From positions 58,838,001-58,902,000 of the forward strand of contig NC_086379.1 in NCBI RefSeq assembly GCF_036588685.1: DNA of 64,000 nt, in the 5' to 3' direction. Shown piece by piece: positions 11,176-57,308 of this stretch. The notes under the pieces are model-generated. The model did not search any database and had not been told where the DNA came from. It saw only the letters and a list, made by a program, of their open reading frames with translations. This DNA comes from Mytilus trossulus. Its lineage: Eukaryota. Position 1 is the stretch's first letter; each line of letters opens with the position of its first letter. A program made the translations under genes and the position numbers.

Positions 11176-14100
11176 TGGTTGAACGTAATACAAAAACCGT
11201 TCCACAGATGATTTCAAATATGTTATACATGTCTAAACTTAAATCCACAACAAATTACAATATATGTGCCAAAATACCTGAACACTAAAATCCAGATAAG
11301 TGAAAATCCACTGTTCGCCACCGGCTATAATTTGAAAGTGACGACTACTTTCTGAAAATGTTTCTTATACGACGTCACTGAAGACACGCTAACATAGTGC
11401 ACGTGTACATTAATATGAAAGTGAACCAAAGTGACGGTTCTAGTAGACAAGTATGATTTTGGACCATTCAAACATTATAAAAAGGATAAATATGGAATTA
11501 AATACGATGCTTTAAAAACTTGTAATTGTTTTGTAACTATGAAAGATTATTCCAAGCAAGTGTGCAACAATGAAAAGATGTACGACCTAGTTTCGCGGAA
11601 AATACACGGGAAATTTGAATGAAATGTTTTTATTAAAAGAATACTGTCAATAATCGTGGCACAACACCGCACCACTTAAAGAAAAAAAATAGACTGCCCC
11701 TAGAATTGACATATTAAACATTAAATGAATGCTCAAATTTCAACATAAATAGCATACATATATAGCAGCAAAATAAAAGTCTCTTTATTAGTATTTTAAT
11801 CAAATCAAAAAGTTCTTTCTATTTTCTTGATTTAACGACACCAACAGAACTTCTTCTGATCTTCTTAGAGGATTTGGGCTGAGTCCCGGTTTTACTGTTT
11901 TGGAGTTTTTTCACTTCTTCTTGAAGAGCTGTCTTCCTTTTTTTCAGTTTTTCTATAAAATTACCAAACCGATGCACTAAAATGCATGCTCTTCTAAGTC
12001 TTTACGTTGATTACATTTCTACCAAATTATTTCCTTATTCCAAAATTTATTTATCTTTGGGATCAATGTTTATTTTCGCAATTTCAATCACTTCTTCTTG
12101 TATAAATATTTTGTCATTTATTCATGTTAATTCAAATTCAGTAAGGTCATCACCAACATTATTCAATCGTAAATGTATACCACTTATAGTTAATGTATTA
12201 TGCAGCCTTCACTACATGCTTTCAAAATAAAGGTACTTTTGATTGAGTTAATCCATTTCAATTGATTTTTTAAAGTGCGTCTTTCTTTATTGTGATGTTG
12301 AACTTTTATGTTCCCTCTATCATCTTTTCAAGCACATGAAATTTGTAAAATTCACATGAAATTTCTAAAATTTACGTGTGGTCAAGAATTATTCAAAGAG
12401 TCAGTCTTGTTCAACTTGGTCTGATAACTAAATAATTAAGTTTTATAAATGTTCATAGTTTATGATGGATGCACGATTTTCGGCAGCTATATTATGAATT
12501 GAAGCAAGTGTGGTGTTAGTATTATAATATACAGTGAATAAGTGCATTTCTAGTACCAAAATATAATGTGCTAAGTTGAAAAATATATTCTGCATGTGGA
12601 ACATAATGTTTATGTTTAGCGTTAAAGAACCAACAAAAGCAGCTTAATTAAAAGTGTTCTGCACGTTAAAAGATAGCTGGATTTAATGAATAAACATAAA
12701 AAGACATTTAACGATTTATCACATTTACTATGAATCAGAAAAATAGTGTTTAAGTTAATATTATAAGATAGCATCAAACAGGAATAAAATACTATGTCAT
12801 TCAAAAAAACGTGAAATGCATTCTTTAACTTTTCGAATAAATAAGAATAATTCCTTCTACTTAATATCAAAGGGAATATATATTAAAGAATTTACAGTAA
12901 AGCCATGTTTATGTAAAATAAGGAAGTATAGTTATTGCAGATAAATTATACCGATAGGTATTCGACCCAGACAATACGTAGATACTTTGATTAGTCCTCA
13001 ATTAAGCATTCTTTGTTCGTATGTTATAAAAATTTACCACCCCACAATTTATCGGAAATAGTTCTTGTAATTTAAGACACAAACATAAGTATGCTTATAA
13101 CTTGAATTTGCTGATTAAGTATCTAATACTGTAAATAATGTTTAGGGTTTCTTCCAAGGGAAGTCTTGTCAAGTGAACTTAGTTTTTATTCGCGTCTGAT
13201 AAGTTGTATTTCGAAATAAAAACGTGATTTTAATTTTGAAATTATGTCGGACAAGACATATATCAACCAATATATATAAATACCAGCAATCTATTAACAT
13301 AGTTTCTGAAAAAGTGGAACGCAAACAACATTGAATGCTACTTTGAACCCGGTATAGAACTCAATACTAAAAATCATTAGAAACGGGTACATTGACACAC
13401 AAACAAACTATTGTGTTGTTGCCTCATAATGTTTTTATTGTTCCAAAGATTGCTCACCCTATACAAAACAACATGTACGCTTTAAAGCAATCAATTTGTT
13501 AAAACTAGCACAGCCTGTTTCACATGCCGTGGCCATTTAAGTTAAAATCGGCGCTGATTATTTTTGGAAGATTGTAGAGGACAAATTAATTCGAGTACCC
13601 GGACCGAACTGAGTGAAATCAAATGTCTCGTCCTGTTATCTGGGCCTTTGCATCGAAATTTATCAGATAATTTCACTCGTTCATGTTAATCAATATTGCA
13701 CACTTTAACTCCACAAAAACATAAAGTTTGTGAAATACACACCTTTTGGAAATTGAGTCCATTGGAACGGATAAAAGTATATATAACAAATATACCGACT
13801 TCGACGGAAAGTTCAAATCGGAAAGTCTCTTTTTAAATGCATAATAAAAAGCTCAAACACACCAATAGACCGAAAAACAACTGTCGTATTACCGCCTTGG
13901 TACAGTAATTTCCGTATGTAGAAAATAGTGTTTGAATCTGATTTTACACCAAGAAAAACCTTACACTTCGATGAAAGTTGCTTAAAATTCCGCTAAATTG
14001 TCTTTGTATGAGCAGGAAATCTTCACAAGACCAAATGAATAATTATCAAGAATTCAGTATCTCGAAACGTCATGGATAGTCAAAGAAGAAATGACTTGTA

Positions 14101-16406: not shown

Positions 16407-16835
16407 ATAGATATAGGAAGATGTGGTGTGAGTGCCAATGAGACAACTCTCCATCCAAATAACAATTTAAAAATTAAACCATTATAGGTTAAAGTACGGC
16501 CTTCAACACGGAGCCTTGGCTCACACCGAACAACAAGCTATAAAGGGCCCCAAAATTACTAGTGTAAAACCATTCAAACGGGAAAACCAACGGTCTAATC
16601 TATATAAACAAAATGAGAAACGAGAAACACGTATATATTACAAAAACAAACGACAACTACTGTACATCAGATTCCTGACTTAGGACAGGTGCAAACATTT
16701 GCAGCGGGATTAAACGTTTTAATGGGCCCAAACCTTCTCCCTTTTTCTGAAACAATAGCATAACATCACAACATATAAAAACATACGATAAAATATCAAT
16801 TAGCAGACTTAACTCAATCAAAAAACGTATGATTA
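16407..16835 (-). mobile_element. Twister-motif-bearing short retroposon-like repeat nested in the Sola element
   Basis: Near-identical reverse complement of 51980-52401. Related copies or fragments at 50.0k and 57.0-58.1k. Confidence 0.85.
16667..16750 (-). ncRNA. Twister ribozyme-like motif (type P5 permutation)
   Basis: Reverse complement of the 52065-52148 motif, with all core elements retained. Confidence 0.65.
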
Positions 16836-17338
16836 CACAAAGAACGAATAAATTTGATCTGCGATATCTGAGTACAAATGCACAGTTAATTAAATATTAG
16901 AGACAAACAGTCATGACCAAAAGGCTATCAAACAAATTCAAACACACTGAGAAATATTTAACCAATCAATTTATGTATGGCAGATTATGAATGACCTGGT
17001 TATAAAAGTTTAAATACAGAAAAAAATTACTTAAGAATATTAACAAAAACACCTTTCCATTAAAGACGCAACTTTTGGTAACAATCAGCAAAAAAAAATA
17101 TACCAATATAGGCTACACTTTTAAAGTAATCATCTTTTTAGAAAAGCATCCATTTCTGGGATTTTGTCACACTCCTGACATATTTGACACATATCATATA
17201 TATCAAAAAATATATAATATGAATGCATTTATCACATGTTGGAAGAAAAGTATCAAAAACCAGCAGGCAATTCTATCGAAATTTCATGAAATTATTGAAT
17301 ATATAGAATATGTTCTCTTTTTTTTTTAAACAACATAA

Positions 17339-20621: not shown

Positions 20622-23609
20622 TTCTGTTAAATATCCAATCGCATAGCTGTTGATTATTTTGCTGTGGTTTTGAGAATTCACGGTAATATTCAGGTAAGTT
20701 AAAAGATCATTTTCCAAAATGTTTGGTGTACTGTTATTCTTTCCCGTTAGGTTACGGTTGGTTTGCCGGGGATAACTTTAAAGGTTATTTTTTTGAAAAG
20801 TTCCGTTTGCACACTTCGAAAGCTGGCATTCATTTTTTTAATTTGGTCGTTCCTGATGTTTCAGTGTAATTGTCTCCGTCTGGTACAGGTTTCAGGTTTT
20901 TCACGGAGTGTTTTTAATTTTTTATTTCATAGTGAAGTTTGCGTCACATATATTATAGTTGTAATCTTGGCTGTGTCTTCATGGAAGTAGTTTCCGCGGC
21001 ATACCAAATTCCTTGGGTTCTGAGTACTTGTATTCAAATCAATAGAAAGTACCTTTTGTATGAGGGATGGTGGGAAAGTCTGGTCGGAATAACAAATACA
21101 ACACTTAAACAAATCCTGGGAAGATCCAAAGCTTATGAGTTCGTGTCCGCGCAGATCCGACGTATATATAAATACGACTTTTCAGACGATTAAGGCAGTG
21201 CTCAACACATGGAATTATTGTCTATTTTAACTAGTTTAATAAACCACAATCGTTACTAGGTTCATAACCCCAATTTTGTATATTTAAAACTTTACCAATT
21301 AACCTTAAGTGTTTGCATGTAACTTCTAATACATTCTCCATTTTGACATTCCAATATTAAAGTCAAAGGGTGTCTTTAGACTGTCTTCTCGATCTTTGAT
21401 ATATATTTAGGATATTTATGACTGATAAACTACATTTTTAATGTATAGCTATCTTTGGATAATGAAATGAAGGCTTATTTTCCTGTCGCAATACTTTATG
21501 TTGTATGAATATAACAATCAAACTGGTAAAACTTAAAAAAACAAATCAAAGAAAATTTGGGTCATTTCCATGATGTAAAATTGAAGCAGCTATTATTTAA
21601 TAAGAAGAAAAAAACACTGAATAACAATGAAATATGATTAAAAACGTCTGTCAATTGATAGGTACACTTTTAATTTAATTTTGGTATATATGATGAGTTT
21701 ATTTACATGATGATGATGAATCCCTTGTATCCTCATCAATTTTGGATAAATAGAAAATATGGAAAAAATTAAACGGGCAATATCGGGTACTTATTCGTTA
21801 TAAGAAAAACATCATAGATTCACTTTTTTTTTTTTACAAAAGATCTTGAAATTTAAGACGGAAACAAGAAACATATTCCATTGAAACGTGTTACCTACCT
21901 AGAACAAAAATTAGGTTTATGAAAGAAATGACATGTAATGAAAGAGAAAATACACACTACGACTTCTTTACACGCGTTTCAGTATACAGCGATGCATAAT
22001 AGTATCCGTCGTGCGTACAAATGGTATAATGAAAAGAAATATCCTGGTTTATCATATAATTTGAATGATAATATTAACAGGATACGTGAGCAAATATAAC
22101 ACGAATAGAAAATTGAAAAACAGAATTGTAATCAAAAGTTCTAGACACTCCGGTTAAATATAATAGATTTCGGGCTTCACTGGGGCTATGGACTATGAAC
22201 TCGTGTTTTTTGTGATTGTCATTAATACCCCTTCGCCCGACAGCTCAGGAGATATATAACAGTGACGGAGAATATGAGTCCATATTTCCGTTAGATCCCC
22301 AGATAGCGTATTGAGAAATACTAGTAGGTGGGTTGCACGGTATAATATTTGATATTGAATTAAAAATTGTGATGGATATTGTATAGCAATATGTATAATT
22401 CAAATTATTATCATGGTATGAATTGGATCTCAGAATTGTTGGTATGAAATTGCTTCACCGCAGAATTACCTTAACAAGTCCACTTTCTCCATGTTTCGAA
22501 ATAAAACTAGGGGAAGTTAACCTTTTTAAGATTTTAAATATAAGACCAAAGTCGTTAAATTACAAAAAAAAACAGACTTTTCTGGAGTGCTTAGTTGACA
22601 GTTATTAACCATTATAAAGTATAAAGTGTAAAGCCCGGAAAACATTTAACTAGCATGTGGACTTTTATGCGACATTTAATCGTTGTAAGCTGAAAATATG
22701 TTACTGTATTTATGTTGAGAACGGAAATTATCAAATCTTTAACAGACTTCATCCTGTTTAAAATTGATTTCATAGAATTTGAATACTTCATACAGTCTAA
22801 GTCAAATAACCTACTATTGATAGACGGAATTGAAAAAAAAATACCAAGTCACTGTTATATTTTTTGGGTAAAAAACATATGGTTATGTAGGATTTGTTTG
22901 AAGAACTAATTCCAGGCGGACATGTAACAGTTAATATTGATCCGTCATGAAAAATAATTGGAAAATCGAGATATCTTCAAACCATATTGAAGATAAAATA
23001 CGAGAAGCATAACCGCTTTGTATGCTATATCCATAGCATTGTTGGTTATCAAGGTTATTATAAGAAAAAATATTCTGACAGACATTCTTTAAAATGACAC
23101 AAATGAAAAAAAATATATACAACTGTGTCTTGCAATGGGAACATTACATATCCAAGATCCATTTTTGTTTGTTTAGATTTTCATCTTATGATTTTAGACT
23201 GATGGTAAAATATGAAAGACTATTCGACCTGCGGTGACAAAGTGACGATTAATCGTCTCAATAAATAAACTTCAGTTCCAACATGAAAACGTGGTTATAG
23301 TTATTGGAATGATAGTTACTTATATATATATATCGATTATCCACTTTTTGGCAGTTATTATTCCGCTGAAAACGTATTCTTCTTTTTTTGCAACAACAAA
23401 AAAGAGAGTATTGTTTAACTAGATGGTTGTGTAGTGAAAAGTTGACCTATTTAAAACTAGACAAAGTGATGCCTCCGCACTCCACTCTGAGGTAACTGTA
23501 ATATAACAAAGTTAATGTAGAAATTTCTTTGATATACTATTGTGTCTGGGAGACACAATTGATGCCCTGCCGATGGAAAGTGATATTTTTAAATAACTAT
23601 AACATTTAA

Positions 23610-24090
23610 AAAGTAAAAACACAAACATACTGAACTCCGAGGAAAAATCAAAAAGGAAAATCCAAAATCAAAAGTCCAAAAACATCAAACGAATGGATAA
23701 CAACTGTCATATTCCTGACTTGGTACAGGCATTTTCTAATGTAGAAAATGGTGGATTGAACCTGGTTTTATAGCTAGCTAAACCTCTCACTTGTATGACA
23801 GTCGCATCAAATTCCATTACATTGTCAACGATGCATGAACAAAACAAACATACTCAAAGAGTAAAAATGTCAAAAATAGGGGTACAGCAGTCAATATAGT
23901 GTTATAATCTTAATATCACTATTAAAACAACAAATGTAACGAAGAAGCACAAAAAGGCATACATCATATTTAACATACTCATTTTGCTTTTCTTATACGA
24001 CCTAATTAATCTATGTACAGTTAGGATAGAAGGTTTTCAGTACTGGTGTAAAATTGTGCGTTTGAAATTCGCACAGGTAGACATAAAAAT
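23610..24090 (-). mobile_element. Dispersed short repeat family carrying a twister-like motif
   Basis: Reverse complement homolog of 40165-40640. Fragments at 13.8k, 31.6k, 40.0k, 44.7k and 47.3k. Confidence 0.8.
23703..23802 (-). ncRNA. Twister ribozyme-like motif (GGU/ACC, AC/GU variant)
   Basis: Minus strand reads ACUGUCAUA..GUGA-GA-GGU-UUAGCUAGCUAUAAAACCAGGUU-CAA-UCC-AC-CAUUUUCUA..UAGAAAAUG-CCUG-UACCAAGU-CAGG..UAUGACAGU. Confidence 0.55.
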
Positions 24091-27317: not shown

Positions 27318-27359
27318 CGCAGGACGCGCGTTTCGTCTACAAAAGACTCATCAGTGACC
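27318..27359 (-). ncRNA. Minimal hammerhead ribozyme (core intact, helix I weakened) in a family A fragment (27278-27395)
   Basis: CUGAUGA-GUCU(UUUGU)AGAC-GAAA-CGCGC-GUC on the minus strand. Confidence 0.7.
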
Positions 27360-27395
27360 CTCGAATCCAAAAAAAGTTTTAAAGGCCAAATAAAA

Positions 27396-30733: not shown

Positions 30734-31575
30734 TAGTCCGAGATTACTCTGACGTCCGACGGCTGTTTTGCCAGACAAGCTTGGGCCGTGGGACGTCAGA
30801 GCTTGTTCCATATCAAAAAGTGGATATTTGCCCACCCAAAATAGATGCGCTGCCTCCTCGCTTTTTGAGCCGACTGAGGTCCTTGGAATTATATAAATCG
30901 GGCTTCAAATCTCTTAATTTTTCATTTATCTCTCCATTTATGTAAGTTTCACCTACCTGCCAACCCTTTATTTTCTGATAATTAGACAGTTTTCACAGTG
31001 ACCTATGATTTATGCATTTCAAAGATTATCACGTGACCCCGAGAAAACAGTGCAAACGACCATAATGTAACACCTCGTTCATTTACGATGCAAGTTACCT
31101 AAATGTCCGAGAGCTTCCGAATTGTATCGTGGTCGGAACTAAATGCTAATTACCGATCTCCTTTAAAGGAGGTAATAACACGTGGTTGCTTCTAAATGTT
31201 AAACATCGATCTCCTATAAAGAAAGTAAAACAATATAAATATTTGCATATTTGAGTCTCGAGGCCACGAACTCTCTCGTAACTTGACGTCCATTTGAAAG
31301 TGAAAGTCAAAATGCGGAAATCGATTGGTCTATGTGAAAACTGTTAAAATATAGAAAAATAAAGGTTGGCAGGTAGGTGAAAGTTACATAAATGAAGAGA
31401 TTGAAGCCCGATTTATATATTTCTAAGGCCCTCAGTCGGCTTTAGAAGCGAGGAGGCAGCGCATCTATTTTGGGTGGGCAAATATCCACTTTTTGATATC
31501 GGACAAGCTCTGACGTCCCACGGCCCCAGCTTGTCTGGCAAAATAGCCGTCGGACGTCAGAGTAATCTCGTACTA
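30734..31575. mobile_element. Non-autonomous Academ(H)-like element with ~245 bp TIRs
   Basis: TAG...CTA termini. TIRs at 30734-~30978 and ~31352-31575. Flanks CCATTCTTT / CCATATTTT are consistent with a decayed 9-bp TSD. Confidence 0.75.
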
Positions 31576-31839
31576 CCATATTTTGTGCTATAAAACGTGT
31601 TCAATTTACCATTTTTTACATTTGAAAATACCTGTACCAAGTCAAGAATTTGGCAGTTGTTGTCCCTTTGTTTAATCTGTTTTGTCATTTGATTTTGACA
31701 TGTGATTAGGGACTTTTCGATTGAGTTTTCCTCGGAATTCAATATTTTGTAATTTCACTTTCCACTGCGATTTGCTAGTCTTTTGTCTTTGTTCAAATCA
31801 CCTTTTTTTTCGATTTATTTCATCGTTATTATGTGTAAA

Positions 31840-32480
31840 AAATGTGGTATGATTGCCAATGATACAACTCTAGCACAAGAGACCAAAATTACACAGAAAT
31901 TAACTACTGTAAACTCATCATAGATAAAAGGACTAAATTTAGTATATAAGCCAGACGCGCGCCTCGTCCACTACAGGGGACCGTACGGCTTTCAACAATG
32001 AGCAAAGCCCAATTTGTAAAGCGAGCTATAATAGGCCCTAAATGAAAATGTAAAAGAATACAAACGAGAAAACTAACGGCCTTATTCATGTTAAAAAAAA
32101 CAAATATGTAACACCTTAACGAACGACAACCACAAAAAAAAACAGGCTCCTGGCTTGGGATAGGCATATACATCCAGAATGTGTCGGGGTTAAACATAAC
32201 CCAACCGTCATCTAACCTATGACAGTGGTATAACAGTACAACATAAAAACAACTAAAATAATCAGTTGAAAAAGGCTTTTATCAGATTGATAAAAAATAA
32301 AAGTAGACGTGGACGCTAGTTCAAAGCCTCTAACAACTTATAAAAAATCGTGCATCTAAGACTAAATTGTTAATCCGTACATATCCATCATCTAATGGAC
32401 TTAACAGTCGGAATAACATGACCTGTAGCAATGCCAAGATTCAGGTAATGTCAGATTGTAGATCCATTAATGTGTATATG
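31840..32480 (-). mobile_element. Short retroposon-like repeat with a degenerate twister motif and an inserted hammerhead fragment
   Basis: Terminal AATGTGGTATGATTGCCAATGA motif. Minus-strand CCUA-UCCCAAGC-CAGG at ~32149-32164. Family A fragment at 31909-31970. Confidence 0.65.
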
Positions 32481-37748: not shown

Positions 37749-38582
37749 CTGTTTGCATAGCATAAATTGTTCTAAATAATAAGGATATTCTTATCCCAAG
37801 CATAAAAACATAGCCGTATTTGACACAACCTTTTTCAACTTTTAATCTTCAGTGCTGTACAACTTTGTACTTTTTCACATTCCATCTTTTATATCTGGGC
37901 GTCACTGGTGAGTCTTGTGTGGACGAGGCGGGTTTTGGCGTATTGAATTTTAAACCTGATGCTTTTTGTTATAGATCTTTTAATCATATGATTCTTTGCC
38001 TAATACGTTCTCCTATTTATTTGTATTGTAGTCATGTAATTTAATGTTGTCATTCCAATGTTATATTTAACATTGTCATTAAAGTGCGAGGTTTGCCATG
38101 CCACAAAATCAGGTTCAACCCACCATTTTTATCTTTAAAAATGTCCTGTACCTAGTCAGGAAAATGGCCATTGTTATATCGTAATTCGTGTCTGTGTGTG
38201 TAACATTTTCACCTTGTGTTTCCGTTGTGTCGTTTGTTTTCTCTAATATTTGAGTGTGAATTCACATTACTATAAGACGTGTCACGGTATTTTTCTATCC
38301 CAAATTCATGTTTTTGGTTTTGATGTTATATTTGTTATTCTTATCGGATTTTGTCTAATGCTTAGTCCGTTTTTGATGCGTTTTGTTATTTGATTTTGCC
38401 ATGTGATTATGGACTTTCCGTATTGATTTTCCTCTGAGTTCAGTATTTTTGTGATTTTAATGTTGTGTCGTTGTTCTCTTATATTTAATGCGTTTCCCTC
38501 AGTGGTAGTTTGTTAACCCAATTTTGTTTTTTTCCAAATATTTACGAGTTTTGAATAGCGGTATACTACTGTTGCCGTTATT
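37749..38582 (+). mobile_element. Composite repeat (family B): degenerate hammerhead followed by a twister-like motif
   Basis: Highly similar to 42695-43461. Hammerhead remnant at 37899-37940, twister-like motif at ~38074-38170. Confidence 0.8.
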
Positions 38583-40164: not shown

Positions 40165-40640
40165 CTTTAACCTGTGCGAATTACAAACGCGCATTTTTAC
40201 ACCAGTACTGAAAACCTACCATCCTTTATGGGTGGATTTTACTTTTTAAAAAAAATTCGTGTAATATAGCAAAAAAAGAATGTTAAACTTGATGTAAGCC
40301 TTTTTGTGCTTTTTCGTTACATTTGTTGTTTTTATAGTGATTAAGATGATAACACAATGTTGACTGATGTACCCCTATTTTTGACATGTTTACTTATTGT
40401 GTCTGTTTGTTTTGTTCACGCATCGTTGCCAATGTTATGGAATTTGATGCGACTGTCATACAAGTGAGAGGTTTAGCTAGCTATAAAACAAGGTTCAATC
40501 CATCATTTTCTACATAAGACATGTCTGTACCAAGTCAGGAATATGATAGTTGTTATCCATTCGTTTGATGTGTTTGAACTTTTGATTTTGCCATTTGATT
40601 TGGGACTTTCCTTTTTTAATTTTCCTCTGAGTTCAGTATT
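40165..40640 (+). mobile_element. Dispersed repeat with a twister-like motif at 40452-40550
   Basis: Reverse complement homolog of 23610-24090. Confidence 0.8.
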
Positions 40641-42694
40641 TTTGTGTTTTTACTTTTTTATAACTTAGAAGTTTTAATAGTTTTTTGTTTCCACAGTCTT
40701 ACTTTAGTTTACCTCGTTCACATTTTATGAAATAAAACACAATACTTAGATCCAAACCTTGCCGACAGATTCTCATTTGGGTAGTAAGTAAATAACCGTT
40801 CTAGAGGAATACCCTTTGAATTTTTTTATAAATTTCTAACTAAAGTTTAGCTCCTTTTAATTTTATGAAAATCGTGCACAATTGTTTTAAAGCAAACTTG
40901 AGCGCGGCTACTATTCTTCTGTTGTTTGTCAACTAATATTTAGTTGTAGGGCTTTTGCTCAAATTCAAGTATTTTTGGAAAATCATTAGCAACTTTGAGG
41001 GTTGGTTTTGTTTTTTAAAACATAATAAATTTGAAGCAAAACGAGTATGATATTTAAATTTTTTTTAAAAGTGATGTTTATTTTTGAAAGATTTATAATT
41101 ATTCATTGAACTTCCGAGTTAAAATGACCCGAAAATTAATTTCTTCTTCTTTGTAACCTCCATAGGAACGATCAGATACAGATGTTTTGTTGTTTTTAAA
41201 TTAGATCCAGTTTTACTAGTGGAAACATAAATATGTCCCTGGGAAATAGTGAGACAACACTGTTGTTTAATCTTACGGTTTGTAATTGTGTTCATAAAAC
41301 CTCTTCAACGATTCAATTAAAATTTTGAGTGAACATTAAACTGCCTTAACAGTTTTTATGACAGTAATAATGTCCTATCAAGAAAGAACATGTGTAAGAT
41401 ACAAGCTTAAGAATAGCGGATTAACTGTGATTAAATATCATTGTCATGAGAAATCGTTATACCAATTATCAAAAAGAGAGAGAAAAAAATCAGAAGGAAA
41501 CCTAAATCAACAAGCTTTACATTCAATACAGATTATAACAAATTTATTGCATAATAAAATAACCTTTTACCTTGAACTTTCTTAGGGATATTAAAACATA
41601 TCTCCATCAATAGTGTAACAAGGTTTCTACTTATGAGGCATTCATGTCATCATTCTCACTGGAATCAACTTTTTTTTGTATCTTTGTAACTTTTCAGTTG
41701 GTCTAAAATACTATATGTAAAACGAGTAAACAACCATTCACATCCTTTTTATTAAGATCAGGCGCCTGCACTACTACAATTTCACATATAATGCAAGTTT
41801 TCAAAATCTTATTCAGCAGTGTTACTCTTTGATAAAAAAGGTTTATCGTGATTTAACATTTTATAACATGTTATTATGAAATTAAATTAAATACCGCTTT
41901 AGGTCAGAAATTAAATGAAATAAACACATATTTAAATCAATGTATTGCTAAGGACTTGAGCGTTTACACGGGATGCCAAAATAGCATATGGCAAAACCAA
42001 AGGTACTTTATTTGAATGATTTGCAACACGTGACTTTGTCCCTTTTGATCAAATTACTTCCCTTAGATTAAGTCGGATAATCCAGTCCTTTTCCGTCATG
42101 TACCTAAAACTAATGTATCTTTAAAAACTCCCTATGGCGGAAATTTACTAAATTGCTAAGTAATTTTAATGGAAAATTATTAAAATTTGACTTTTTACGA
42201 AATGGGAAGGTTGAAATCAACATCTTTTTAAAAGAATTTGCCTGAAAACGTAAGAAAGCAGGTAAGTAAAAAGTTATTTAAATTTAAAATTCAACCTACA
42301 AGGTGTTTTCCTATATGCGAACAAATCATGAACAAAATCTTCATGCATGTGTGTTTCTGTCTTCAATCTTGCTATTTTACGATTTACTGCATTTTGATTG
42401 ATCTTAATATATCAATTACACAACGGTTAAGCTTCCGATTTTCTAAACTTAAAAGACCGAAAGATTTCCGAGTATACAATGACCATTGGTACACGGACAG
42501 AAGCCTAAATCATGTAAAATTCACCTTATGCCAACAAATTATTCATTCTACATAGGTATTTGTATATTGACATTTTTATTTTAAGGGCTTATATAATATT
42601 ATTGTAAAGGCTTCCGTCATGATAAGGCAAAATGGCCGCTATGCAAATTTGCAAATAACCCAAATTTTGCAATATGGTTTAAATTTTGCAATTT

Positions 42695-43461
42695 CTGTTT
42701 GCATAGCATAAAGTGTTCTTAGTGATAAGGATGTTATTATCCAAGCATAAAAACATAGCCGTATTTGACACAACCTTTTTCAACTTTTGATCTTCAGTGC
42801 TGTACAACTTTGTACTTTTTTCACTTTCGAACTTTTATATCTGGGCGTCACTGGTGAGTCTTGTGTGGACGAGGCGCGTTTTTGGCGTATTGAATTTTAA
42901 ACCTGATGCATTTTGTTATAGATCTACTAATCATGTGTTTCTTTGTCTAATACGTTCTCCTATTTATTTGTATTGTAGTCCTGTAATATTATTTTGTCAT
43001 TTCAATGTTATATTTAACATTGCCATTAAAGTGCGAGGTTTGACATGCCACAAAATCAGGTTCAACCCACCATTTTTATCTTTAAAAATGTCCTGGGCCA
43101 AGTCAGGAAAAATGGCCATTGTTATATTATAGTTCTTCTCTGTGTGTGTAACATTTTAATGTTGTGTTTCCGTTGTGTCGTTTGTTTTCTCGTATATTTA
43201 AGTGAATTCACATTACTATAAGACGTGTCACGGTACTTTTCTATCCCAAGTTCATGTATTTGGTTTTGATGTTATATTTGTTATTCGCATCAGATTTTGT
43301 CTAATGCTTTGTCCGTTTCTTTGAGTGTTACATTTTAATGTTGTGTCGTTGTTCTCTTATATTTAATGCGTTTTCCTCAGCTTTAGTTTGTTACCCCAAT
43401 TTTGCTATTTGTCCGAAGATTTACGAGTTTGAACAGCGGTATACTACTGTTGGCTTTATTC
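42695..43461 (+). mobile_element. Composite repeat family B, second copy
   Basis: Hammerhead remnant at 42846-42887 and twister-like motif at ~43021-43118. Aligns with 37749-38582. Confidence 0.8.
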
Positions 43462-44694: not shown

Positions 44695-47574
44695 TATATG
44701 ACACTGTCTTACAATGAAGAGGTTTATCTTGAAATACAACCAGGTTTATCCCTCCATTTCTACATCAGAAATGCTGTACCAGTTGTCTTACAATCGTATG
44801 ATGTGTGTGAGCTTTTGATTTTTTCATTTCACATTCTGATTTGAATATACTAGAGTTCAGTATTTTGGAGTTTTCATACTTTTTATACCTCGGAAGTTAC
44901 ATTATATTTTTCACAATTCATTCTTTACGAAATTTCAATAATCTAAAACCACATTCCAAGACTTGCACATTCAGATGTCTATAAATGATGTCTTTGTTTT
45001 TTATTATTTTTTTTTTATAAAGTTCTTGCATCTCATTATATCTTATGAGATTTGAGATTCATGGATTTATTAATATTTAAAGAGATGTGGTATGATTGGC
45101 AATTCGACAATTATCAACTTAATATAACATACGTTCAAATCACTTTACTAACAAACGAAATATGACAGACATGAACAACGGCAACTACTGGACTACTCCT
45201 GACTTATTACTGGCACATACAATGTAAAGAATGTGGTCGGGTAAACATATAATAATGAACGGTTTTTTTTAGCGTATAAACCCCCTCCATTATTAACCTG
45301 GGGCAGTGATGTAACTAACAGTGCTCCATATTAAGGACAAGCTATAACAATAACTTGCAATTGGCTTTTCTAAAAAGATAGGTACTTCTGAAGCAAGAGG
45401 ACCTGTCACATATATACTCATTGTCATATAAATTTTTTAAAATGCACTTCTGGTCACTTCGCCTCTGATTGTGTTTTTAGGGGTAACACGACAGGTGTCA
45501 TACGTAGAACAGGATCTGCTAAAAATTATTAGCACTATACGTGTAGCATACTCAAAACCACAAACACATGATTGCATTTGCTCTAATCTCTTTTTTTTAA
45601 ATGTGCATTAAAATTTGCCACTGGACGTTAGGCAAGATGCAATCGTTCAATTAAACTTTCATTCAAAAAGAAGTTATAAACAGCGATGATATATTGTGTA
45701 GGTTAATAAATTGCCCTTTCAATAAAATCGATAAATAGTATGTACTATGTGAACAGTCATTACAGTATATTTTCTTAGAAATGAGGGACGAATTACCAAA
45801 TGGACAGTCAAACTCATAAATCTAAAACAAACTGACAACGCCATGGCTAAAAATGAAAAAAAAACAGAAAAACAATTGTACACATGCCACAACATAAAAA
45901 ACTAAAGAATAAACAACACGAACCCCACCAAAAACCATATAGAAAGATACATGTGCATTGTGTAGACATCAAACGAATATGATAATGAAGTTTATTACAT
46001 AAAAGTTGTCTGAAGCATGTAAATTTGCTTCAGCTGCGTTCGTATCTTATGTGATTATTTGTTTATTTTTAACGAAAACTGTTTGATAAATCATGTGCAA
46101 TCGCAACATATGTATCAGTAGCACATGCATACTATAATGTTGGAAGACAATCTGATACGTAATTAAGACTGAGTAATTGTCATATAATGATTATAATATA
46201 CTTTGAACCCCAAATCCTTTGGGTTGAGACATTTGTAAAACAAATAAAAGTACAGTACTATGAGTTTGTTAACACGCAGATGTCAATCAAGAATTGGGGA
46301 CCTTCACTTGGTGAATGTATGGAAATGGCTCTTATATTGTGCAGTCACACTGGTGGTTTAGGTATTACTTTTTAACAATTGTCTACACCTACAGTTGAGC
46401 ACGACTTCGACAGGTAAGATGTGAGGTGTCGTCTCAAAAATAAAAAGTGAACATAATACTATTCATCATTATTGGATGTATTGCTTGAAATTAATTTGAT
46501 TGGCAATGATACAATTTTCTACCGTTGTCCAAAAAACATGGAATTTTTTTTTAAATTTAGAATAAAGACGATTAACTTTAAAAAAGAAGAGAAACAAATC
46601 GATCTCTGATCGTCTTAAAGGGAATCACTTATGAAAACGAAGAACAAAATGTTACATAATTAACTAAACAGTTAATATAGTTTTATTGACCAAATCAACA
46701 TTATCAAATCTAGAAAAGGGATATAGTTTGCCTCCAATGAGTTGATTATCGGCATTTATTTTTTTATATTATCGTCTTTTGTCTATAATGACGACACTCA
46801 AACGATTAACTGCAATTGGCTTTATCCTACAATAATTGAATATCAAATTTTAATGGTCAGCTAGTACTTTAAAGGGGCATCAATTATGAAATTCATGTTC
46901 ACAGATAGATTTGACCAAAAATCTAATATTTGATTTATCACATACAAAACGTCTCAGTAAAAATGAAAGGAAACAAGACAACTAAAGACTAAGCAACACG
47001 AACCCCAACAAACACTTGGGGTGATCTCAGGTGCTCCGGAAGGGTAGGCGTATTCTGCTCCAAATGTGGATATTATTTTTTCTTAACTCATGATTGCATC
47101 TGCACGTGTATTAGTATAAAAAGCATTAAAGTTACATTCGTCCATTAAAATCAGGCTAAAAATACAAGCTTTTAAGCACTTCATTGAAGTTTGTTTTTTT
47201 CATTTGAATGTTGAATGAAGCCTGAATGAATATTTGAGCTACTATACTTTTATTTTTGTGTAGCTATTTACAGCAAAACAGTTGACAAAAAGTAAAAATC
47301 ACAAAAAAACTGAACTCCGAGGAAAATTCAAAACGGACAGTCCATAATCAAAAAACAAATTAAAAAGCTCAAACACATCGAACGAATGAATGAAAACTGT
47401 CATATTCCTGACTTTGTACTGGAATTTTCTTATGCAGAAAACGGTGACTTGAACCTGGTTTTAAAGCTAAGAAAAAATCTGAATTGTGTGACAGTCGCAT
47501 CAAATTCCATTATATTGACAACAAAATTGTCTGGCACTGTGTTTATTATTTAACAGGTTAACAACATAAGTAAA

Positions 47575-51979: not shown

Positions 51980-52401
51980 TAATCATACGTGTTTTGATTG
52001 AGTTAAGTCTGCCAATTGATATTTTATCGTGTGTTTTTCTATGTTGTGATGTTATGCTATTGTTTCAGAAAAAGGGAGAAGGTTTGGATCCATTAAAACG
52101 TTTAATCCCGCTGCAAATGTTTGCACCTGTCCTAAGTCAGGAATCTGATGTACAGTAGTTGTCGTTTGTTTATGTAATATATACGTGTTTCTCGTTTTGT
52201 TTATATAGATTAGACCGTTGGTTTTCCCGTTTGAATGGTTTAACACTAGTAATTTTGGGGCCCATTATAGCTTGTTGTTCGGTGTGAACCAAGGCTCCGG
52301 GTTGAAGGCCGTACTTTAACCTATAATGGTTTACTTTTTAAATTGTTATTTGGATGGAGAGTTGTCTCATTGGCACTCAGACCACATCTTCCTATATCTA
52401 T
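51980..52401 (+). mobile_element. Twister-motif-bearing short repeat in the GPCR intron (antisense to the gene)
   Basis: Near-identical to the reverse complement of 16407-16835. Ends in GAGAGTTGTCTCATTGGCACTCAGACCACATCTTCCTATATCTAT. Confidence 0.85.
52065..52148 (+). ncRNA. Twister ribozyme-like motif (type P5 permutation)
   Basis: P5 UCAGA/UCUGA. P2' GGGA-GA-AGG. UAA-UCCC-GC. P3 UGCAAA/UUUGCA. P4 CCUG-UCCUAAGU-CAGG. Confidence 0.7.
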
Positions 52402-53720
52402 TTATAACAGAATTACTTTTTACGTGTTTATCACATAATGACTATGCATAAATTTGAGGCAACAGTAGTTTACCGATGTTCAAATTAAGTACGGTGACCT
52501 ATAGTTGTTAATTTTGTGTCATTTTGGTATCTTGTGGAGAGTTGTCTCATTGGCAATCAGTTGTTGATTAGGTTTGTTACGAGTTCTTCCGTTTATAGAT
52601 ACAAAATAAAGGAAAATACAATAGGAACGAGACAAGGTGCGTCGGTAGAAAGCCTCTGATGCATGCATGCATCTTTCAATATACAAATCCACACCAGTCA
52701 AAATGTCCCAATTGGGAATAAGACACAATGTAATGTCCAGATCAGACGGTTATTCTGGTAACTAAATACTGCGATCACATGTCGCTAGTTAGTTGAAAAC
52801 CAATAGGTGATTCGTTTAGGTGATCATTGTAAATTTGGAATCGTCATTTTTGTTATGGATTTTAGTATGCAATGGTTCATTTTACTTTATTCATAGTATT
52901 TGTTTTCCTTCACACGCTTATATTTATTACATGTATGACCTTGCAGGTAATTTGCATCTTCTATTTCTATTTGTATAGTAACGGTAATTGAGATGATAAT
53001 GTCGCTCTTTCAAATGAAGACTTGAAAAAGTGTGTTTTGCGTAGAAATATTGAAAGATTTGATAATATTGCAAAATCTTCAATGTTATGATTTAACATGG
53101 AATATTGCACTTGTTAACTTATCTAATACTTTTTTCTATGCATGTTGAATTGACGTTTGTTTTTTGTTGCACTTCAGTGTTCTGTTGGTTCGTAGTTTTC
53201 CTCTTGCAGTTGATGTGTTTCTCTCAGTTTAAGTTTGTAACCTGAATTTGTTTTCTCCAAATCGATTTATGACTTTTGAACAGCGGACATGTATTAATGT
53301 TGCCTTAGTTTATTCAACTTTGGCCTAAGATCACAGTAGTCTTTTTCGGTTATGGACTTATTATGAAGTACTGGATCTTTATTCTGTCGCTACGTAATTC
53401 ATCGGTAAAGCTCGACTTAAAACAGTTTCACAGCAATTGAATACAATTTCTTTTCCTTAAAATTTGTATAACAGATAAAATGTGTACGAAAATATATAGA
53501 ATTTAGCTTACTCTGACTGTTTTTTTAGTTGAAGAGAATGTGTTTGAGCGTTTTATTTTGTTTAATAGCTACTGTAGAACCACGATTATGCAAACATGAC
53601 TAATTAAAAATATCCTTGGTGGTTTCTCGTTACTGCTTAATTTGATTATTGCAAATTATGATTACAACGTGCATAAAAAACCAACTCAGAAATGGTTATA
53701 GCCGGTTATAAATTCTTTAC

Positions 53721-54464
53721 CTTTCTCTTTGAATTCGCTAATCGTTCATCTCTCATCGGGACAGCTTCACCTGGTGTTTTCTTTATCCATATAATGTAAC
53801 CTATTCTACTATAGGTACAAGCTAGAGCCATTAGAGGAATAAAATACTGAAGCAGCAAGATAACCAGACTATATACAGATCTGTTCATATCTCCTGTAAA
53901 AACCTCAATACACTGGCCCTTAGGACATTGATCGGTGTCATTTGAATATAAAATTTTAGATGTTATGGCAGTCGGTAAAGGCACAGCGGCAGACATAATC
54001 CATACACATATCAGTACTAATACCACACCTTTGTTAGTTATTTTTGGTCGTAGCGGATGTAAAATAGCTATGTATCTGTCAATACTCATTGCTAGCATTG
54101 TCAACGCACTAGAAAATACAGCAACAACTTGAATGTAAGTTCCCAGTGGGCAGGTGAATGATCCGAACGGCCAATAATGAAATATCAGATTTGCCATAAT
54201 TGTTATAGGCAACATTAATGCTTTGATGATATCGCTAAAGGCAAGATTTAATAGAAATAAATTGGTAACACTGCGCATTCTGTGATCATTAATTATAAGG
54301 TAGCACACAACGCCATTTCCAAATATAGCCACAATTAGAACAACACTGTACATAATGAGAAGAAAGCTCTCCCACGGACCGATCTCAGATATACAAACAT
54401 CGTCTATATCAATTACAGGAAAAGATTTGTCTGTGCTGTTCTCCATGGTGTGATGTTCTATCAT
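53721..54464 (-). CDS. Luqin/RYamide-type neuropeptide GPCR (rhodopsin class), coding exon TM1-ICL3; spliced protein about 363 aa
   Basis: GN in TM1, LAFSD in TM2, WPFG..C, DRY, YFIPL. ICL3 PGEA...RD.RL..SKRK|MVKMM is typical of RYamide/luqin receptors. GT donor at 53720. Confidence 0.92.
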
Positions 54465-55904
54465 TACAGTACTTTTATCCTGAAGAAATACAAATAATTT
54501 GCAGTTAGTATGAAATTAATCTGTGATGAATATTATGAAGTACATTTCTTTTTACGTACATAATTTACATTGAACAAGGAAACGTTGTCATTTTATTGCA
54601 ATCTGTTGTCAGTTGATATGCATGATTGGTCTTTCAATAGTAAGTAAACAATTGTATAAAAAATTAACTCATGTAAATATATGTTTGAACAAATATTTTG
54701 CTATAGACATGCAGGTAAATATGCCGTTGACATGGCATTATGGCATTGGAATGTTTGCCTGTAAACACGAACTCGAGTACAATACACCTATACTAAACGT
54801 TTTCTAGTAGAAAAAAAGTGCACCGTTCGTACATTAAAGCCCTGTAGACTATCGTAGTATAACCGTATATATTAAAAACATGTGGTGGCTGTTAAACCAT
54901 AAATTTATCTGATTAATTTTTTTTAAATGTTTTGAAACCGACACATTTTTGTTTTACCCCCTCTTCGGTGTTTTATTCAATTTCGGGCTTTCAAATTCTT
55001 TGTCTTCGAGCATTACTAAAGAGCCATTAATTGTCGTATTGTGCATCTGGTGCAATAAAATTGGTACTGTGTGTGTTATTAAAACTGCAGGAATGTATCA
55101 TTCAACAATGTTTAGTACGAAAACATTCACCTGCCCGTTCAGCACATTAAATATTCATCAATATTAGTGCATTCAGTTGATAAATATGCTTTTGTTTTAT
55201 TGATAAATTATATACATATACATATTCTGTATATTAGTTAAATGAATTCGAATTACAATTGATATCGCAAATTAATCACGTTATAACATATACATGGTAA
55301 TTTTCGTAAAAATTATCGACACGCGGATTATTTTCTGAAACATAATCTGACCAGTCACTAAATTGTTGGTTTTTTTTAATTACCAACATACAGTATTAAA
55401 ACTGGTTTAAAACTATATTGATGCTTCATAGAGGCAAAAGTGTCACTGTTGTTCAAAATTCATGAATCGATTGAGAGAAAACAAATCCGGGTTATAAACT
55501 AAAACCGAGAGAAACACATCACCTATAACAGGAAACAACGAAACAACAGAAACTGAAGTTCAACAAAAACAAACAACAACGCAACTTACATGTAAACGAA
55601 CTATGACATAAAAACTGCCATATTCTTGACTTGGTAAAGGACATTTTAAGATAAAAAAAAAATGGTGGGTCCAAGCTGGTTTTGTAGTAAGCCAAACCTC
55701 CCGCTTAATGGCAATGTTGGAAATACCACTAAAATGACAACATTTAATAAAATTCAATATTGCCTCCGTGGTTATTTATTGAGACATGAATGTAAAAAGA
55801 CAATTACAGTTTCATGTATATACATTAAAATTAAAGATAGAAAGAAAGCCTGAGAAAAACGTCGAAACTTGTCAAATTGATGAACAGTTACAATCCAAAG
55901 ATAG

Positions 55905-56100: not shown

Positions 56101-57111
56101 AACTATTATATTTAACTAATGCAAGCAAAATAAGACTTATAGTGAAAAAAAACAATGGTGTCTTAATCAGCTGATAAAACCTGGTGAATGTTTTTCGTCC
56201 ATCTATATTTTCGGTTCTTTGTATAAATATATTCCACTGTTGTTCAAATATGTTAAAAAGGTCCCTTTAGAATGAATCTTTAACGAATATTTCAAATCCT
56301 CAGTCCTGAAAACAAATCGCTGTTTGCCGTCGATATTGAAATGACAAACTTGAAACACAAATAAAAGATCTTGGAAAAATCTTTCCGATTGCAAAAAAAT
56401 AAAATAAAAATTGGGCTTTCTAGATCAATTTAATTTACTTGTTCTTGTGCATATTCCATTAAACTGTCATGAAAACCATTTAAAATAACTGAATAATCTA
56501 TACTATACAATATTAAAAACATGTAAATTAAACGACTCAAGTCCTACAAAGACCATCTTGTAGGGAAATGCCGTCAAAGGTACAATATGTTATTTTTTCA
56601 GAATTGATATAATGTCACTTATATAACTCGACTTAAAAGTCGGTTAAACAAAGCAAACATTATGAAATTATTCTTTTCATTTACATGTAATACAGCTGTC
56701 GGTGTCAGCCCCATTAAGCTATACAATGTAGACAACAGAAACTATCAAGACATGTAAGGAAAAATAAATTACTTAAAATAAGTAGTTAAAGCAAAAGCAA
56801 AAAGAAACGCCGTCGGAAAAAAGAAAAGATTGTTGCCGCTAAGTGAAACTTTTTTTTTGAACAATTTTATGGAACAAATTTCATGAATTCTTATATAATT
56901 TCTTATTGATTGTTTTACAGATGACGGAGGGAATTTTAACAAGGCCAAAGCAAATTTATATTATTTGTCTCATTTCCGAATTAATCTTCTGTGCACAGCT
57001 TGCTATTGACGAAACGGCTTATAGATATAAGAAGATGTGATATAAGTGCCAATGAGACAACTCTCTATACAATAAACTCAACATAGATATCAGGACTAAA
57101 TATTGTATATA

Positions 57112-57153
57112 CGCCTGACGCGCGCTTCGTCTACAAAAGACTCATCAGTGACG
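57112..57153 (-). ncRNA. Hammerhead (GAAA to GAAG variant) in a family A fragment (57073-57215)
   Basis: CGUCA-CUGAUGA-GUCU(UUUGU)AGAC-GAAG-CGCGC-GUC-AGGCG. Confidence 0.6.
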
Positions 57154-57308
57154 CTCGAATACAAAAAAGTTAACAAGGCCAAATAAAGTACGAAGTTAAA
57201 GAGCATTGAGGACCATGCAAAAGTCACAATTTGCAAAAGTAAACCATTATAGGTCAAAGTACGGTTTTGAACACGGAGCCGTGGCTAATACTGAACAGCA
57301 AGATATAA

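What the first reader, a model, noticed from the sequence alone, without database searches (positions are those of the whole stretch)
52065..52148. Twister ribozyme-like motif (type P5) embedded in several dispersed repeat families, with covarying pseudoknots
Seen: P5 (UCAGA/UCUGA), then GGGA-GA-AGG, then UAA-UCCC-GC, P3, and CCUG-UCCUAAGU-CAGG. Known: the twister core is UAA-P2-GC...P4 with an 8-nt loop UCCCAAGC...P2'-GA-GGG. Other families in the window keep both pseudoknots by compensatory change. The 3-bp knot is AGG/CCU at 52.1k and 16.7k and GGU/ACC at 23.7k, 40.5k and 38.1k. The canonical UCCCAAGC loop occurs at 32.15k. The 2-bp knot is GC/GU versus AC/GU. P3 and P5 differ completely in sequence between families yet still pair. 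About 10 intact or decayed copies lie in 64 kb (13.9k, 16.7k, 23.7k, 31.6k, 32.2k, 38.1k, 40.0k, 40.5k, 43.0k, 47.4k, 52.1k, 55.6k). Inference: a high-copy class of twister-carrying non-autonomous retroposons. I do not know of a description of these in bivalves. Predicted cleavage is between U52103 and A52104.
Basis: partly seen in the sequence, partly recalled or inferred. Interest (0 to 1): 0.92.

Follow-up and report, generated by a model that had tools for sequence, protein, structure and literature searches.

The report
Twister ribozyme fold in mussel Penelope-like retroelements
The 84-base stretch has the full fold and key bases of a rearranged "twister" self-cutting RNA, and it lies in the tail of a very abundant Penelope-like (Naiad-type) retroelement, a group reported to lack a ribozyme; cutting itself is not shown.

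Summary
Window 52065-52148 parses base by base as a type-P5 twister with a P3 hairpin, and every named core base is present.

Five repeat families keep P2, P3, P4, P5 and both pseudoknots through compensatory changes: 78-82% of cells are paired, against 23-43% with slid partners. The 3-bp knot is AGG/CCU, GGG/CCC or GGU/ACC.

Rfam does not call it (14-17 bits, far under the cut-offs), although its type-P5 model aligns family C in the same register.

Family A is not a SINE. It is the ragged, 5'-truncated 3' end of a long, young retroelement whose reverse transcriptase is closest to Naiad-type Penelope-like elements. The published description says Naiads lack hammerheads, and no held paper mentions a twister in them.

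The genome holds about 52,000 near-exact P4/L4 modules. P1 is replaced by palindromes that co-vary (GGATCC, GGGCCC, GGTACC), which hints at action as a dimer.

Raw RNA-seq shows transcription but no pile-up of ends at U52103/A52104, so self-cleavage is unproven.

This scan had already reached the Naiad-twister reading on other DNA of this genome; I re-tested it here.

The parts
51980..52405 (+). 5'-truncated copy (426 bp) of the 3' end of the family-A Naiad-like Penelope-like retroelement; it holds the flagged motif
   Evidence: 96% identical to L029:1355-1787. Every family-A copy ends at the same 3' point and starts at a different 5' point.
52057..52069 (+). P5 5' strand: outer CUAUUGU 52057-63, inner UCAGA 52065-69
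   Evidence: The MFE fold pairs it with 52144-48 and 52152-58. Own-family flanks pair at -13.7 kcal/mol, against -4.8 to -5.9 with other families' 3' strands.
52074..52077 (+). P2' (GGGA), pairs with P2 at 52106-09
   Evidence: Family C has GGGG with CCCC instead.
52078..52079 (+). G-A of L1, 3' strand. G52078 is at the position of the twister general base.
   Evidence: Position by alignment to the twister consensus. The role of this G is taken from PMC11662667.
52080..52082 (+). Pseudoknot strand AGG, pairs with CCU at 52131-33 in L4
   Evidence: 100% paired in 14 seed sequences, with two of three pairs changed on both sides. 84.6% paired in 33 unselected hits.
52083..52103 (+). Region in the place of P1. 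It forms no stable intramolecular helix next to the cleavage site. It holds two 8-nt palindromes, 52085-92 and 52096-52103.
   Evidence: The centre of the first palindrome co-varies genome-wide: AT 1101, GC 1344, TA 218, all others 83, out of 2746.
52103..52105 (+). U-A-A of L1, 5' strand. The predicted scissile bond is U52103/A52104.
   Evidence: Register agrees with the Rfam twister alignments. No read-end pile-up at this bond.
52106..52111 (+). P2 (UCCC) and the 2-nt pseudoknot strand GC, which pairs with GU at 52136-37
   Evidence: This knot is 88-96% paired. It is GC/GU in families A, C and D, and AC/GU in B and E.
52112..52125 (+). P3 hairpin
   Evidence: MFE fold. All four counted pairs change on both sides between families.
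52126..52141 (+). P4 (CCUG with CAGG) and the 8-nt loop L4, UCCUAAGU
   Evidence: P4 is 86-89% paired across copies.
52144..52158 (+). P5 3' strand: UCUGA 52144-48 and ACAGUAG 52152-58
16407..16970 (-). Second family-A tail (572 bp) with an intact twister module at 16655-16759. It carries the GGGCCC form of the palindrome.
23608..24078 (-). Family-B element with an intact module at 23699-23805 (knot GGU/ACC, 12-bp P5)
   Evidence: 101 bits.
40170..40658 (+). Family-B element, 84% identical to the 23.7k copy, with its module at 40449-40554
37749..38372 (+). Family-E element with its module at 38070-38175
42695..43318 (+). Family-E element (92% identical to 37749-38372) with its module at 43017-43123 and a hammerhead-related stretch at 42797-42904
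55610..55718 (-). Decayed family-E module
13876..13981 (-). Decayed B-like module
31561..31661 (+). 5'-truncated B-like module
32134..32226 (-). Decayed family-D module with a canonical UCCCAAGC loop
39960..40058 (+). Decayed B-like module
44700..44798 (+).
45183..45300 (-).
47392..47498 (-). Decayed B-like module

Best explanation
The stretch is the core of a circularly permuted twister ribozyme motif: type P5, with a P3 hairpin, and with P1 replaced by palindromes. It sits on the sense strand of the 3' untranslated region of a very young, very abundant Naiad-type Penelope-like retroelement. It lies about 800 nt after the ORF stop and about 260 nt before the element's 3' end. The window copy is a 426-bp 5'-truncated dead insertion of that tail.

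Shown here:
- the fold and every named core base;
- conservation of the fold by compensatory change across five families;
- the retroelement context;
- transcription.

Inferred:
- The RNA self-cleaves at U52103/A52104.
- It plays the part that hammerheads play in the pseudo-LTRs of canonical Penelope-like elements, cutting tandem or read-through transcripts to unit length.
- Because P1 is missing and is replaced by co-varying self-complementary stretches, it probably cuts efficiently only when two modules pair. This is what has been published for the minimal hammerheads of Penelope-like elements.

My odds: a selected twister fold in Penelope-like element tails, about 0.85; catalytically active in some setting, about 0.55.
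For: Sequence and register:
- Rfam's own models align in the same register: twister-P1 on the window copy and Twister-P5 on family C, 17.3 bits, E = 0.12.
- The cleavage-site A-A, the G after P2', the GC knot strand and the AAG of L4 are all present. PMC11662667 reports wobbles in the knots as tolerated and P1 and P2 imperfections as harmless.

Covariation:
- 82% of cells paired against 23-43% with slid partners; covariation score 0.30 against at most 0.12; 0 of 500 shuffles reach it.
- The same on 33 unselected hits: 78% against 25-38%.
- The 3-bp knot takes three complementary states.
- P5 strands pair only with their own family's partner.
- MFE folds recover P3, P4 and P5 in families A, B and C, with z = -2.65 and -4.41 for A and B.

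Context:
- One 3' end and ragged 5' ends.
- An upstream ORF with an RYLDD motif, at least 149 copies at 96-100% identity.
- Full-length relatives P0131 and P0056 carry, in order, an N-terminal GIY-YIG, a CxC motif, GxKF/Y, DKA and YIDD. This is the diagnostic Naiad layout of PMC8557442.

Abundance: 6,920 + 21,261 + 23,937 near-exact P4/L4 modules, with reversed controls at 0.

Palindromes at the P1 position in A, B and C have different sequences, and 97% of 2,746 family-A copies are palindromic.
Against: - No Rfam twister model reaches its gathering score: 14.4 and 17.3 bits against 67.2 and 37.6.
- There is no intramolecular P1.
- In families B and E, P2 is only 3 bp with a bulge and its register is ambiguous (61-64% paired).
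- The nested folds offer competing helices that would sequester the knot strand.
- Raw RNA-seq from four runs covers the site continuously, and no place has a fifth of molecules beginning or ending there. Most transcripts are therefore uncut in vivo.
- The families are related by descent, so the independent compensatory events are few. The structure was also read from these same sequences.
- The N-terminal half of this family's own ORF could not be fetched, so Naiad membership rests on relatives at 41-47% identity.
Confidence: 0.68

Rival explanations
1. It is a former ribozyme or ribozyme look-alike. The module is a conserved structured RNA of the retroelement's 3' UTR, for example a handle recognised by the element's reverse transcriptase or a dimerisation and packaging signal. 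It descends from, or converged on, the twister fold but no longer cuts.
For: - No end pile-up at the predicted site in four raw RNA-seq runs.
- P1 is absent and is replaced by palindromes.
- Genomic copies carry both halves of the module, so the RNA templates were uncut or rejoined.
- Rfam scores are sub-threshold.
Against: - Every base known to matter for catalysis is kept in families that have otherwise diverged to 65-70% identity. These include the A-A after the cleavage site and the G after P2', which a mere scaffold need not keep.
- 94% of twister candidates tested in bulk were active, and P1 was dispensable (PMC11662667).
Confidence: 0.25
2. One reading: a high-copy class of twister-carrying non-autonomous retroposons (SINE-like).
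For: - The two long family-B copies, 23608-24078 and 40170-40658, begin at the same point and are only about 470 bp.
- The family-E copies are about 620 bp and share both ends.
- Some families may therefore be short non-autonomous derivatives.
Against: - Family A, the family of the flagged copy, runs upstream into a reverse-transcriptase ORF and shows ragged 5' truncation.
- Family C likewise has a homologous ORF upstream of its module.
- There is no tRNA-like head in the window.
- Family-B copies also share one 3' end and have ragged 5' ends.
Confidence: 0.12
3. Chance resemblance of a repeat's conserved core to the twister consensus.
For: The Rfam scores (14-17 bits; E = 2.9 and 0.12 on short stretches) are what chance can give.
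Against: - Five helices and two pseudoknots are kept by changes on both sides across families; slid and shuffled controls fall far below.
- The register of all conserved bases matches Rfam's alignment.
Confidence: 0.03

Closest known systems
Type-P5 twister ribozyme (Rfam RF02684, clan CL00120; Roth et al. 2014 as cited in PMC8501958)
   Same: - Order of elements: P5, P2', G-A, 3-nt knot strand, P1 position, U|AA, P2, GC, (P3), P4 with an 8-nt loop N-CCN-AAG-N, P5.
- Both pseudoknots are present.
- The catalytic A and G are at the expected places.
   Different: - There is no P1 helix. About 20 nt with two palindromes stand in its place.
- The knot triplet is AGG/CCU or GGU/ACC in two families, not GGG/CCC.
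- The last L4 base is U, giving a G.U wobble.
- P3 and a long P5 are both present.
- The Rfam score is far under the cut-off.
Twister variants at the 5' end of Perere-3 (RTE) non-LTR retrotransposons of Schistosoma mansoni (PMC8501958)
   Same: A twister carried in thousands of copies by a retrotransposon, on the sense strand.
   Different: - There it is type P1, lies at the very 5' end, and processes the 5' terminus, with the target-site duplication forming P1.
- Here it is type P5 and internal to the 3' UTR.
- The carrier here is a Penelope-like element, not a LINE.
Minimal type-I hammerheads in pseudo-LTRs of canonical Penelope-like elements and animal retrozymes (PMC7761336, PMC7229834, PMC8557442)
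   Same: - A small self-cleaving motif near the 3' end of Penelope-like elements.
- The closing helix is weak and capped by a palindrome, so action as a dimer is expected.
- Such hammerheads also occur in this window.
   Different: It is a different ribozyme class. Naiads were reported to lack canonical hammerheads.
Naiad clade of Penelope-like elements (PMC8557442)
   Same: - Relatives of the ORF have the N-terminal GIY-YIG, KR-rich block, CxC, GxKF/Y, DKA and RT order.
- Heavy 5' truncation.
- Tens of thousands of 3' ends in a bivalve genome.
- No hammerhead in the 3' 1.2 kb.
   Different: The published description mentions no twister. This family's own N-terminal half was not seen here.

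Membership tests
Twister ribozyme (Rfam CL00120) | Score at or above the Rfam gathering cut-off for a twister model | tested here: not met
   - No hit at gathering score in the window.
- twister-P1 gives 14.4 bits against 67.2 on the window copy.
- Twister-P5 gives 17.3 bits against 37.6 on family C.
- The genome search gave no hit over the cut-off, but only 79 candidates were scored.
Twister ribozyme (Rfam CL00120) | Cleavage-site N-A followed by a second A, directly 5' of P2 | tested here: met
   U52103, A52104 and A52105 are followed by UCCC. Families A, C and D have UAA; B and E have CAA. PMC11662667 reports any base at N-1 as tolerated.
Twister ribozyme (Rfam CL00120) | P2 helix, with the conserved G (general base) and A directly 3' of P2' | tested here: met
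   GGGA with UCCC in family A and GGGG with CCCC in family C, each followed by G-A. In B and E, P2 is only 3 bp with a bulge.
Twister ribozyme (Rfam CL00120) | 3-bp pseudoknot between L1 3' strand and L4 | tested here: met
   AGG/CCU, GGG/CCC or GGU/ACC. 100% paired in 14 seeds and 84.6% in 33 hits, with two pairs changed on both sides.
Twister ribozyme (Rfam CL00120) | 2-bp pseudoknot between the dinucleotide after P2 and the end of L4 | tested here: met
   GC with GU (one G.U wobble) or AC with GU. 88-96% paired.
Twister ribozyme (Rfam CL00120) | P4 hairpin with a loop carrying the conserved A-A-G | tested here: met
   CCUG, then UCCUAAGU, then CAGG. P4 is 86-89% paired.
Twister ribozyme (Rfam CL00120) | P1 helix abutting the cleavage site | tested here: not met
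   No intramolecular helix joins 52083... to ...52102. The folds give only a 4-bp GUUU/AAAC stem set back from the site. PMC11662667 reports P1 as dispensable.
Twister ribozyme (Rfam CL00120) | Site-specific self-cleavage | tested here: inconclusive
   In four raw RNA-seq runs no place has a fifth of molecules beginning or ending; depth is continuous across 52103/52104. No biochemical test is possible with these tools.
Naiad Penelope-like element | Penelope/TERT-like reverse transcriptase with no endonuclease C-terminal to it | tested here: met
   An RYLDD motif lies 215 aa before the stop. There is no GIY-YIG in the last 254 aa. 15,465 relatives were found.
Naiad Penelope-like element | N-terminal GIY-YIG, CxC motif, and DKA instead of DKG | tested here: inconclusive
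   These are present, in the right order, in the full-length relatives P0131 and P0056.
Naiad Penelope-like element | Heavy 5' truncation with a common 3' end; very high copy number in bivalves | tested here: met
Naiad Penelope-like element | Partial tandems or pseudo-LTRs, and a terminal 30-40-bp tail | tested here: inconclusive
   RNA reads show a joint that goes back 51 nt at the 3' end, 52400 to 52350. Some copies are spaced about 2.3 kb apart. No full-length copy was inspected.
SINE / non-autonomous retroposon | Short unit with a fixed 5' end and an internal pol III (tRNA, 5S or 7SL) head | tested here: not met
   Family A has ragged 5' ends that run into an ORF. ARAGORN finds no tRNA-like sequence in the window.

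The most novel reading that the evidence does not exclude
Penelope-like elements need a self-cleaving ribozyme of some class. Naiads, thought to have none, swapped the hammerhead for a permuted twister whose P1 is supplied in trans by palindromes. That would make it the first natural twister that works only as a dimer, firing only on tandem (pseudo-LTR) transcripts or at high RNA concentration.
Probability: 0.3. Interest if true: 0.85.

Novelty: new variant of a known kind. Interest (0 to 1): 0.74.

Why it matters
The paper that defined Naiads stressed that they lack the hammerhead found in other Penelope-like elements, yet outnumber them in bivalves. It took this as a sign that the ribozyme may be dispensable or parasitic (PMC8557442).

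If Naiads instead carry a twister at the equivalent place, a ribozyme near the 3' end becomes a general, convergently maintained requirement of this retroelement class. That makes its still unknown role testable with two unrelated catalysts.

The finding would also:
- add tens of thousands of twister modules that current Rfam models miss;
- supply natural compensatory variants of both pseudoknots;
- provide a possible dimer-dependent twister.

Tried and rejected
- Rfam scans at gathering score on the window and the genome found nothing.
- A DNA search of the own genome with the 111-nt module found nothing, because very common words are skipped. Pattern counts were used instead.
After that I used only fully specified short patterns, for counts, and did not try to read letters by another route.
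Relatives' 3' UTRs in other species could therefore not be inspected.
- No supplementary files are held for PMC8557442 or PMC11662667.
- A metagenome scan with the 18-nt P4/L4 pattern returned 80 loci, none of which matched my covariance model. These are chance hits and give no cross-species evidence.
- The listing of cluster members gave no names for the relatives.
The palindrome statistics were redone by reference. The dimer co-fold was left out.
- A tRNA-derived SINE reading was considered, because GGTTCAATCC resembles a B box. I rejected it: no tRNA-like fold, and the stretch is the cleavage site plus P2.
- A circular-RNA junction was looked for in the read joints and none was seen. A religated U/A junction would be invisible anyway.

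Full report
**The observation**

In order:
- P5 UCAGA (52065-69), an A-rich linker, P2' GGGA (52074-77), G52078, A52079, AGG (52080-82);
- a 20-nt stretch (52083-52102);
- U52103|A52104 A52105, P2 UCCC (52106-09), GC (52110-11);
- a P3 hairpin (52112-25), P4 CCUG/CAGG around the loop UCCUAAGU (52126-41), AA, and P5 UCUGA (52144-48).

The minimum-energy fold recovers P2, P3, P4 and P5. It adds an outer P5 helix, 52057-63 with 52152-58 (z = -2.65).

A profile HMM and a covariance model built here each find 14 copies in the window.

**Is it a twister?**

Rfam does not call it:
- There is nothing at gathering score in the window or in the genome search (only 79 of about 26,700 candidates were scored).
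- In a permissive scan of 301 nt, twister-P1 reaches 14.4 bits.
- Family C, which has the canonical GGG/CCC knot, reaches 17.3 bits with the Twister-P5 model (E = 0.12 on 151 nt).
- In that family-C match, Rfam's alignment puts P2', GAGGG, a ~20-nt insert, UAA, P2, GC and the P4 loop in exactly the register of the hand parse.

The score is lost on the unpaired P1 region and the inserted P3.

Against the experimentally derived rules of PMC11662667 the motif passes:
- The A after the cut and the next A are present.
- The G after P2' (the general base) is present.
- Wobbles in the knots, and imperfections in P1 and P2, are tolerated.

**Covariation**

The module occurs in at least five families:

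| Family | Example | P2' with P2 | 3-bp knot |
|---|---|---|---|
| A | 52.1k, 16.7k | GGGA/UCCC | AGG/CCU |
| C | L023, L017 | GGGG/CCCC | GGG/CCC |
| D | 32.2k, L053 | not resolved (decayed copies) | GGG/CCC |
| B | 23.7k, 40.5k | 3 bp plus a bulge | GGU/ACC |
| E | 38.1k, 43.0k, L021 | 3 bp plus a bulge | GGU/ACC |

The 2-bp knot is GC/GU in families A and D and in one of three family-C copies. It is AC/GU in B, E and the other two C copies.

On 14 seed sequences:
- 82% of cells form standard pairs, against 23-43% when partners are slid.
- The covariation score is 0.30 against at most 0.12, and no shuffle of 500 reaches it.
- The 3-bp knot is paired in every sequence, and two of its three pairs change on both sides.
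- All four counted P3 pairs change on both sides.

On 33 hits from the window plus 209 kb of arbitrarily chosen genome, decayed copies included, the figures are 78% against 25-38%.

P5 differs completely between families. Yet each 5' strand pairs well only with its own family's 3' strand: -11 to -20 kcal/mol, against -3.5 to -10 in most cross-family combinations. The related families B and E cross-pair at up to -13 kcal/mol.

Caveats:
- The families are related, so the independent events are few.
- The structure was read from these same sequences.
- P2 in families B and E is weak and its register is ambiguous.

**What carries it**

Family A is not a short non-autonomous element.
- In 30 loci found with its 23-mer, every copy ends at the same 3' point and begins at a different one. 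The longest copies run off the loci 1.8 kb upstream.
- Those long copies contain the end of an ORF on the same strand, with an RYLDD reverse-transcriptase motif.
- The genome holds at least 149 copies of this ORF at 96-100% identity, mostly with a 482-aa open frame.

Of 15,465 relatives in the protein library, the full-length ones have the Naiad layout. P0131 (962 aa) and P0056 (996 aa) are 45-47% identical over the C-terminal 180 aa. They carry, in order, an N-terminal GIY-YIG, a CxC motif, GxKF/Y, DKA and YIDD; P0131 also has a KR-rich block. That is the diagnostic layout of Naiad Penelope-like elements (PMC8557442). There is no endonuclease after the reverse transcriptase.

Family C has a homologous ORF, 68% identical at the DNA level, upstream of its module. 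Family B copies also share one 3' end and have ragged 5' ends.

The window copy 51980-52405 is therefore a dead 5'-truncated tail. In the full element the module lies about 800 nt after the stop codon and about 260 nt before the 3' end.

Genome-wide, near-exact P4/L4 modules number:
- 6,920 of type A;
- 21,261 of type B/E;
- 23,937 of type C/D.

The reversed controls are all 0.

**Literature**

- PMC8557442 states that Naiads lack canonical hammerheads, dominate bivalve genomes, and leave abundant unclassified 3' ends. It never mentions twister.
- Searches for twister together with Penelope-like, Mytilus, bivalve, SINE or RTE found no paper placing a twister in a Penelope-like element.
- PMC11662667 lists bivalves among groups with twister candidates.
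- PMC8501958 shows type-P1 twisters at the 5' end of an RTE element in Schistosoma.
- PMC7761336 mentions unpublished truncated twisters at RTE 5' ends.

Earlier notes of this scan, on other DNA of this genome, had already proposed a twister fold in Naiad tails. I took that as a lead and tested it independently as described above.

**The P1 region**

Where P1 should be, each family has self-complementary stretches of different sequence:
- an 8-nt and a second 8-nt palindrome in family A;
- two 10-nt palindromes in family C;
- a 10-nt palindrome in family B.

Against shuffles, P is about 0.002-0.009.

In family A the centre of the first palindrome exists as AT (1,101 copies), GC (1,344) and TA (218). 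All 13 other dinucleotides together account for 83 of 2,746 copies. Neighbouring bases cannot pair within one strand, so this points to pairing between two molecules, or to a palindromic DNA site. The minimal hammerheads of canonical Penelope-like elements are likewise closed by a palindrome and are reported to act as dimers (PMC7761336). The geometry of a twister dimer is my inference only.

**Does it cut?**

Four raw RNA-seq runs with the same species label lay 2,400-3,500 reads each on the stretch, on both strands.
- Depth is continuous across 52103/52104.
- The tool lists no place where a fifth of the molecules begin or end.
- One strand channel has a shallow dip around 52069-52102. I do not count this as evidence.

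Most transcripts of these dispersed copies are therefore uncut in vivo. This fits a dimer or tandem requirement, or an inactive relic. Genomic copies contain both halves of the module, so the templates were uncut or rejoined.

**Verdict**

- The fold and its selection are well supported. The context is a Naiad-type Penelope-like element rather than a SINE.
- Catalysis is plausible but unshown.
- It is a new variant of a known ribozyme class in a new carrier. It bears directly on the open question of why Penelope-like elements carry ribozymes.

- The metagenome scan gave only chance hits.

Noticed in passing
L029:894-951 (+), G000 contig C1; not in the window: A SECIS_1-like hit (22.1 bits, gathering score 35, E = 0.2) lies about 250 nt after the ORF stop of the family-A element. 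The ORF's open frame is 482 aa in most copies. It therefore opens roughly where clam Naiads have an in-frame UGA, 8 aa after DKA (PMC8557442). This may be a selenoprotein-coding Naiad in this mussel.
   Followed up: partly
window 6422-6465 (-), 34454-34495 (-), 36238-36281 (+), 27317-27360 (-): Type-I hammerhead matches just under the Rfam cut-off (23-30 bits against 34), with a short palindromic helix III. They look like the minimal hammerheads of Penelope-like elements and retrozymes.
   Followed up: no
window 42797-42904 and the matching part of 37749-38372: Family-E elements carry a stretch homologous to the hammerhead-bearing repeats at 34438-34544 and 57109-57215. It lies about 130 nt upstream of their twister module, on the same strand, so relics of two ribozyme classes sit in one short element.
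   Followed up: partly
L002:1512-1596 (+), G000:C2 near 74857360: A different, type-P1-looking twister with a canonical CCGG-UCCCAAGC-CCGG hairpin and GGAG-GAGAG. It scores 30.5 bits (E = 7e-5; gathering score 67.2) and sits next to a truncated family-A tail.
   Followed up: partly
window 52088-52089: About 40-47% of RNA reads carry T-A here (the GGTACC form), but only 218 of 2,746 genomic 34-mers do. That subfamily may be over-represented in RNA, or the runs may come from a sister species with other proportions.
   Followed up: partly
window 52350-52400: RNA reads show a joint that goes back about 51 nt at the element's 3' end. This is a duplicated terminal tail, like the tail extension described for Penelope-like elements.
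   Followed up: no
G000:C1:1156737-1157135: The B-type P4/L4 23-mer recurs with a period of about 39 nt. This looks like a small satellite array derived from part of the twister module.
   Followed up: no
window 53706-54464 (-): An intact 252-aa ORF of a rhodopsin-family G-protein-coupled receptor (7tm_1, E = 5.5e-42). It is probably a host gene among the repeats.
   Followed up: no
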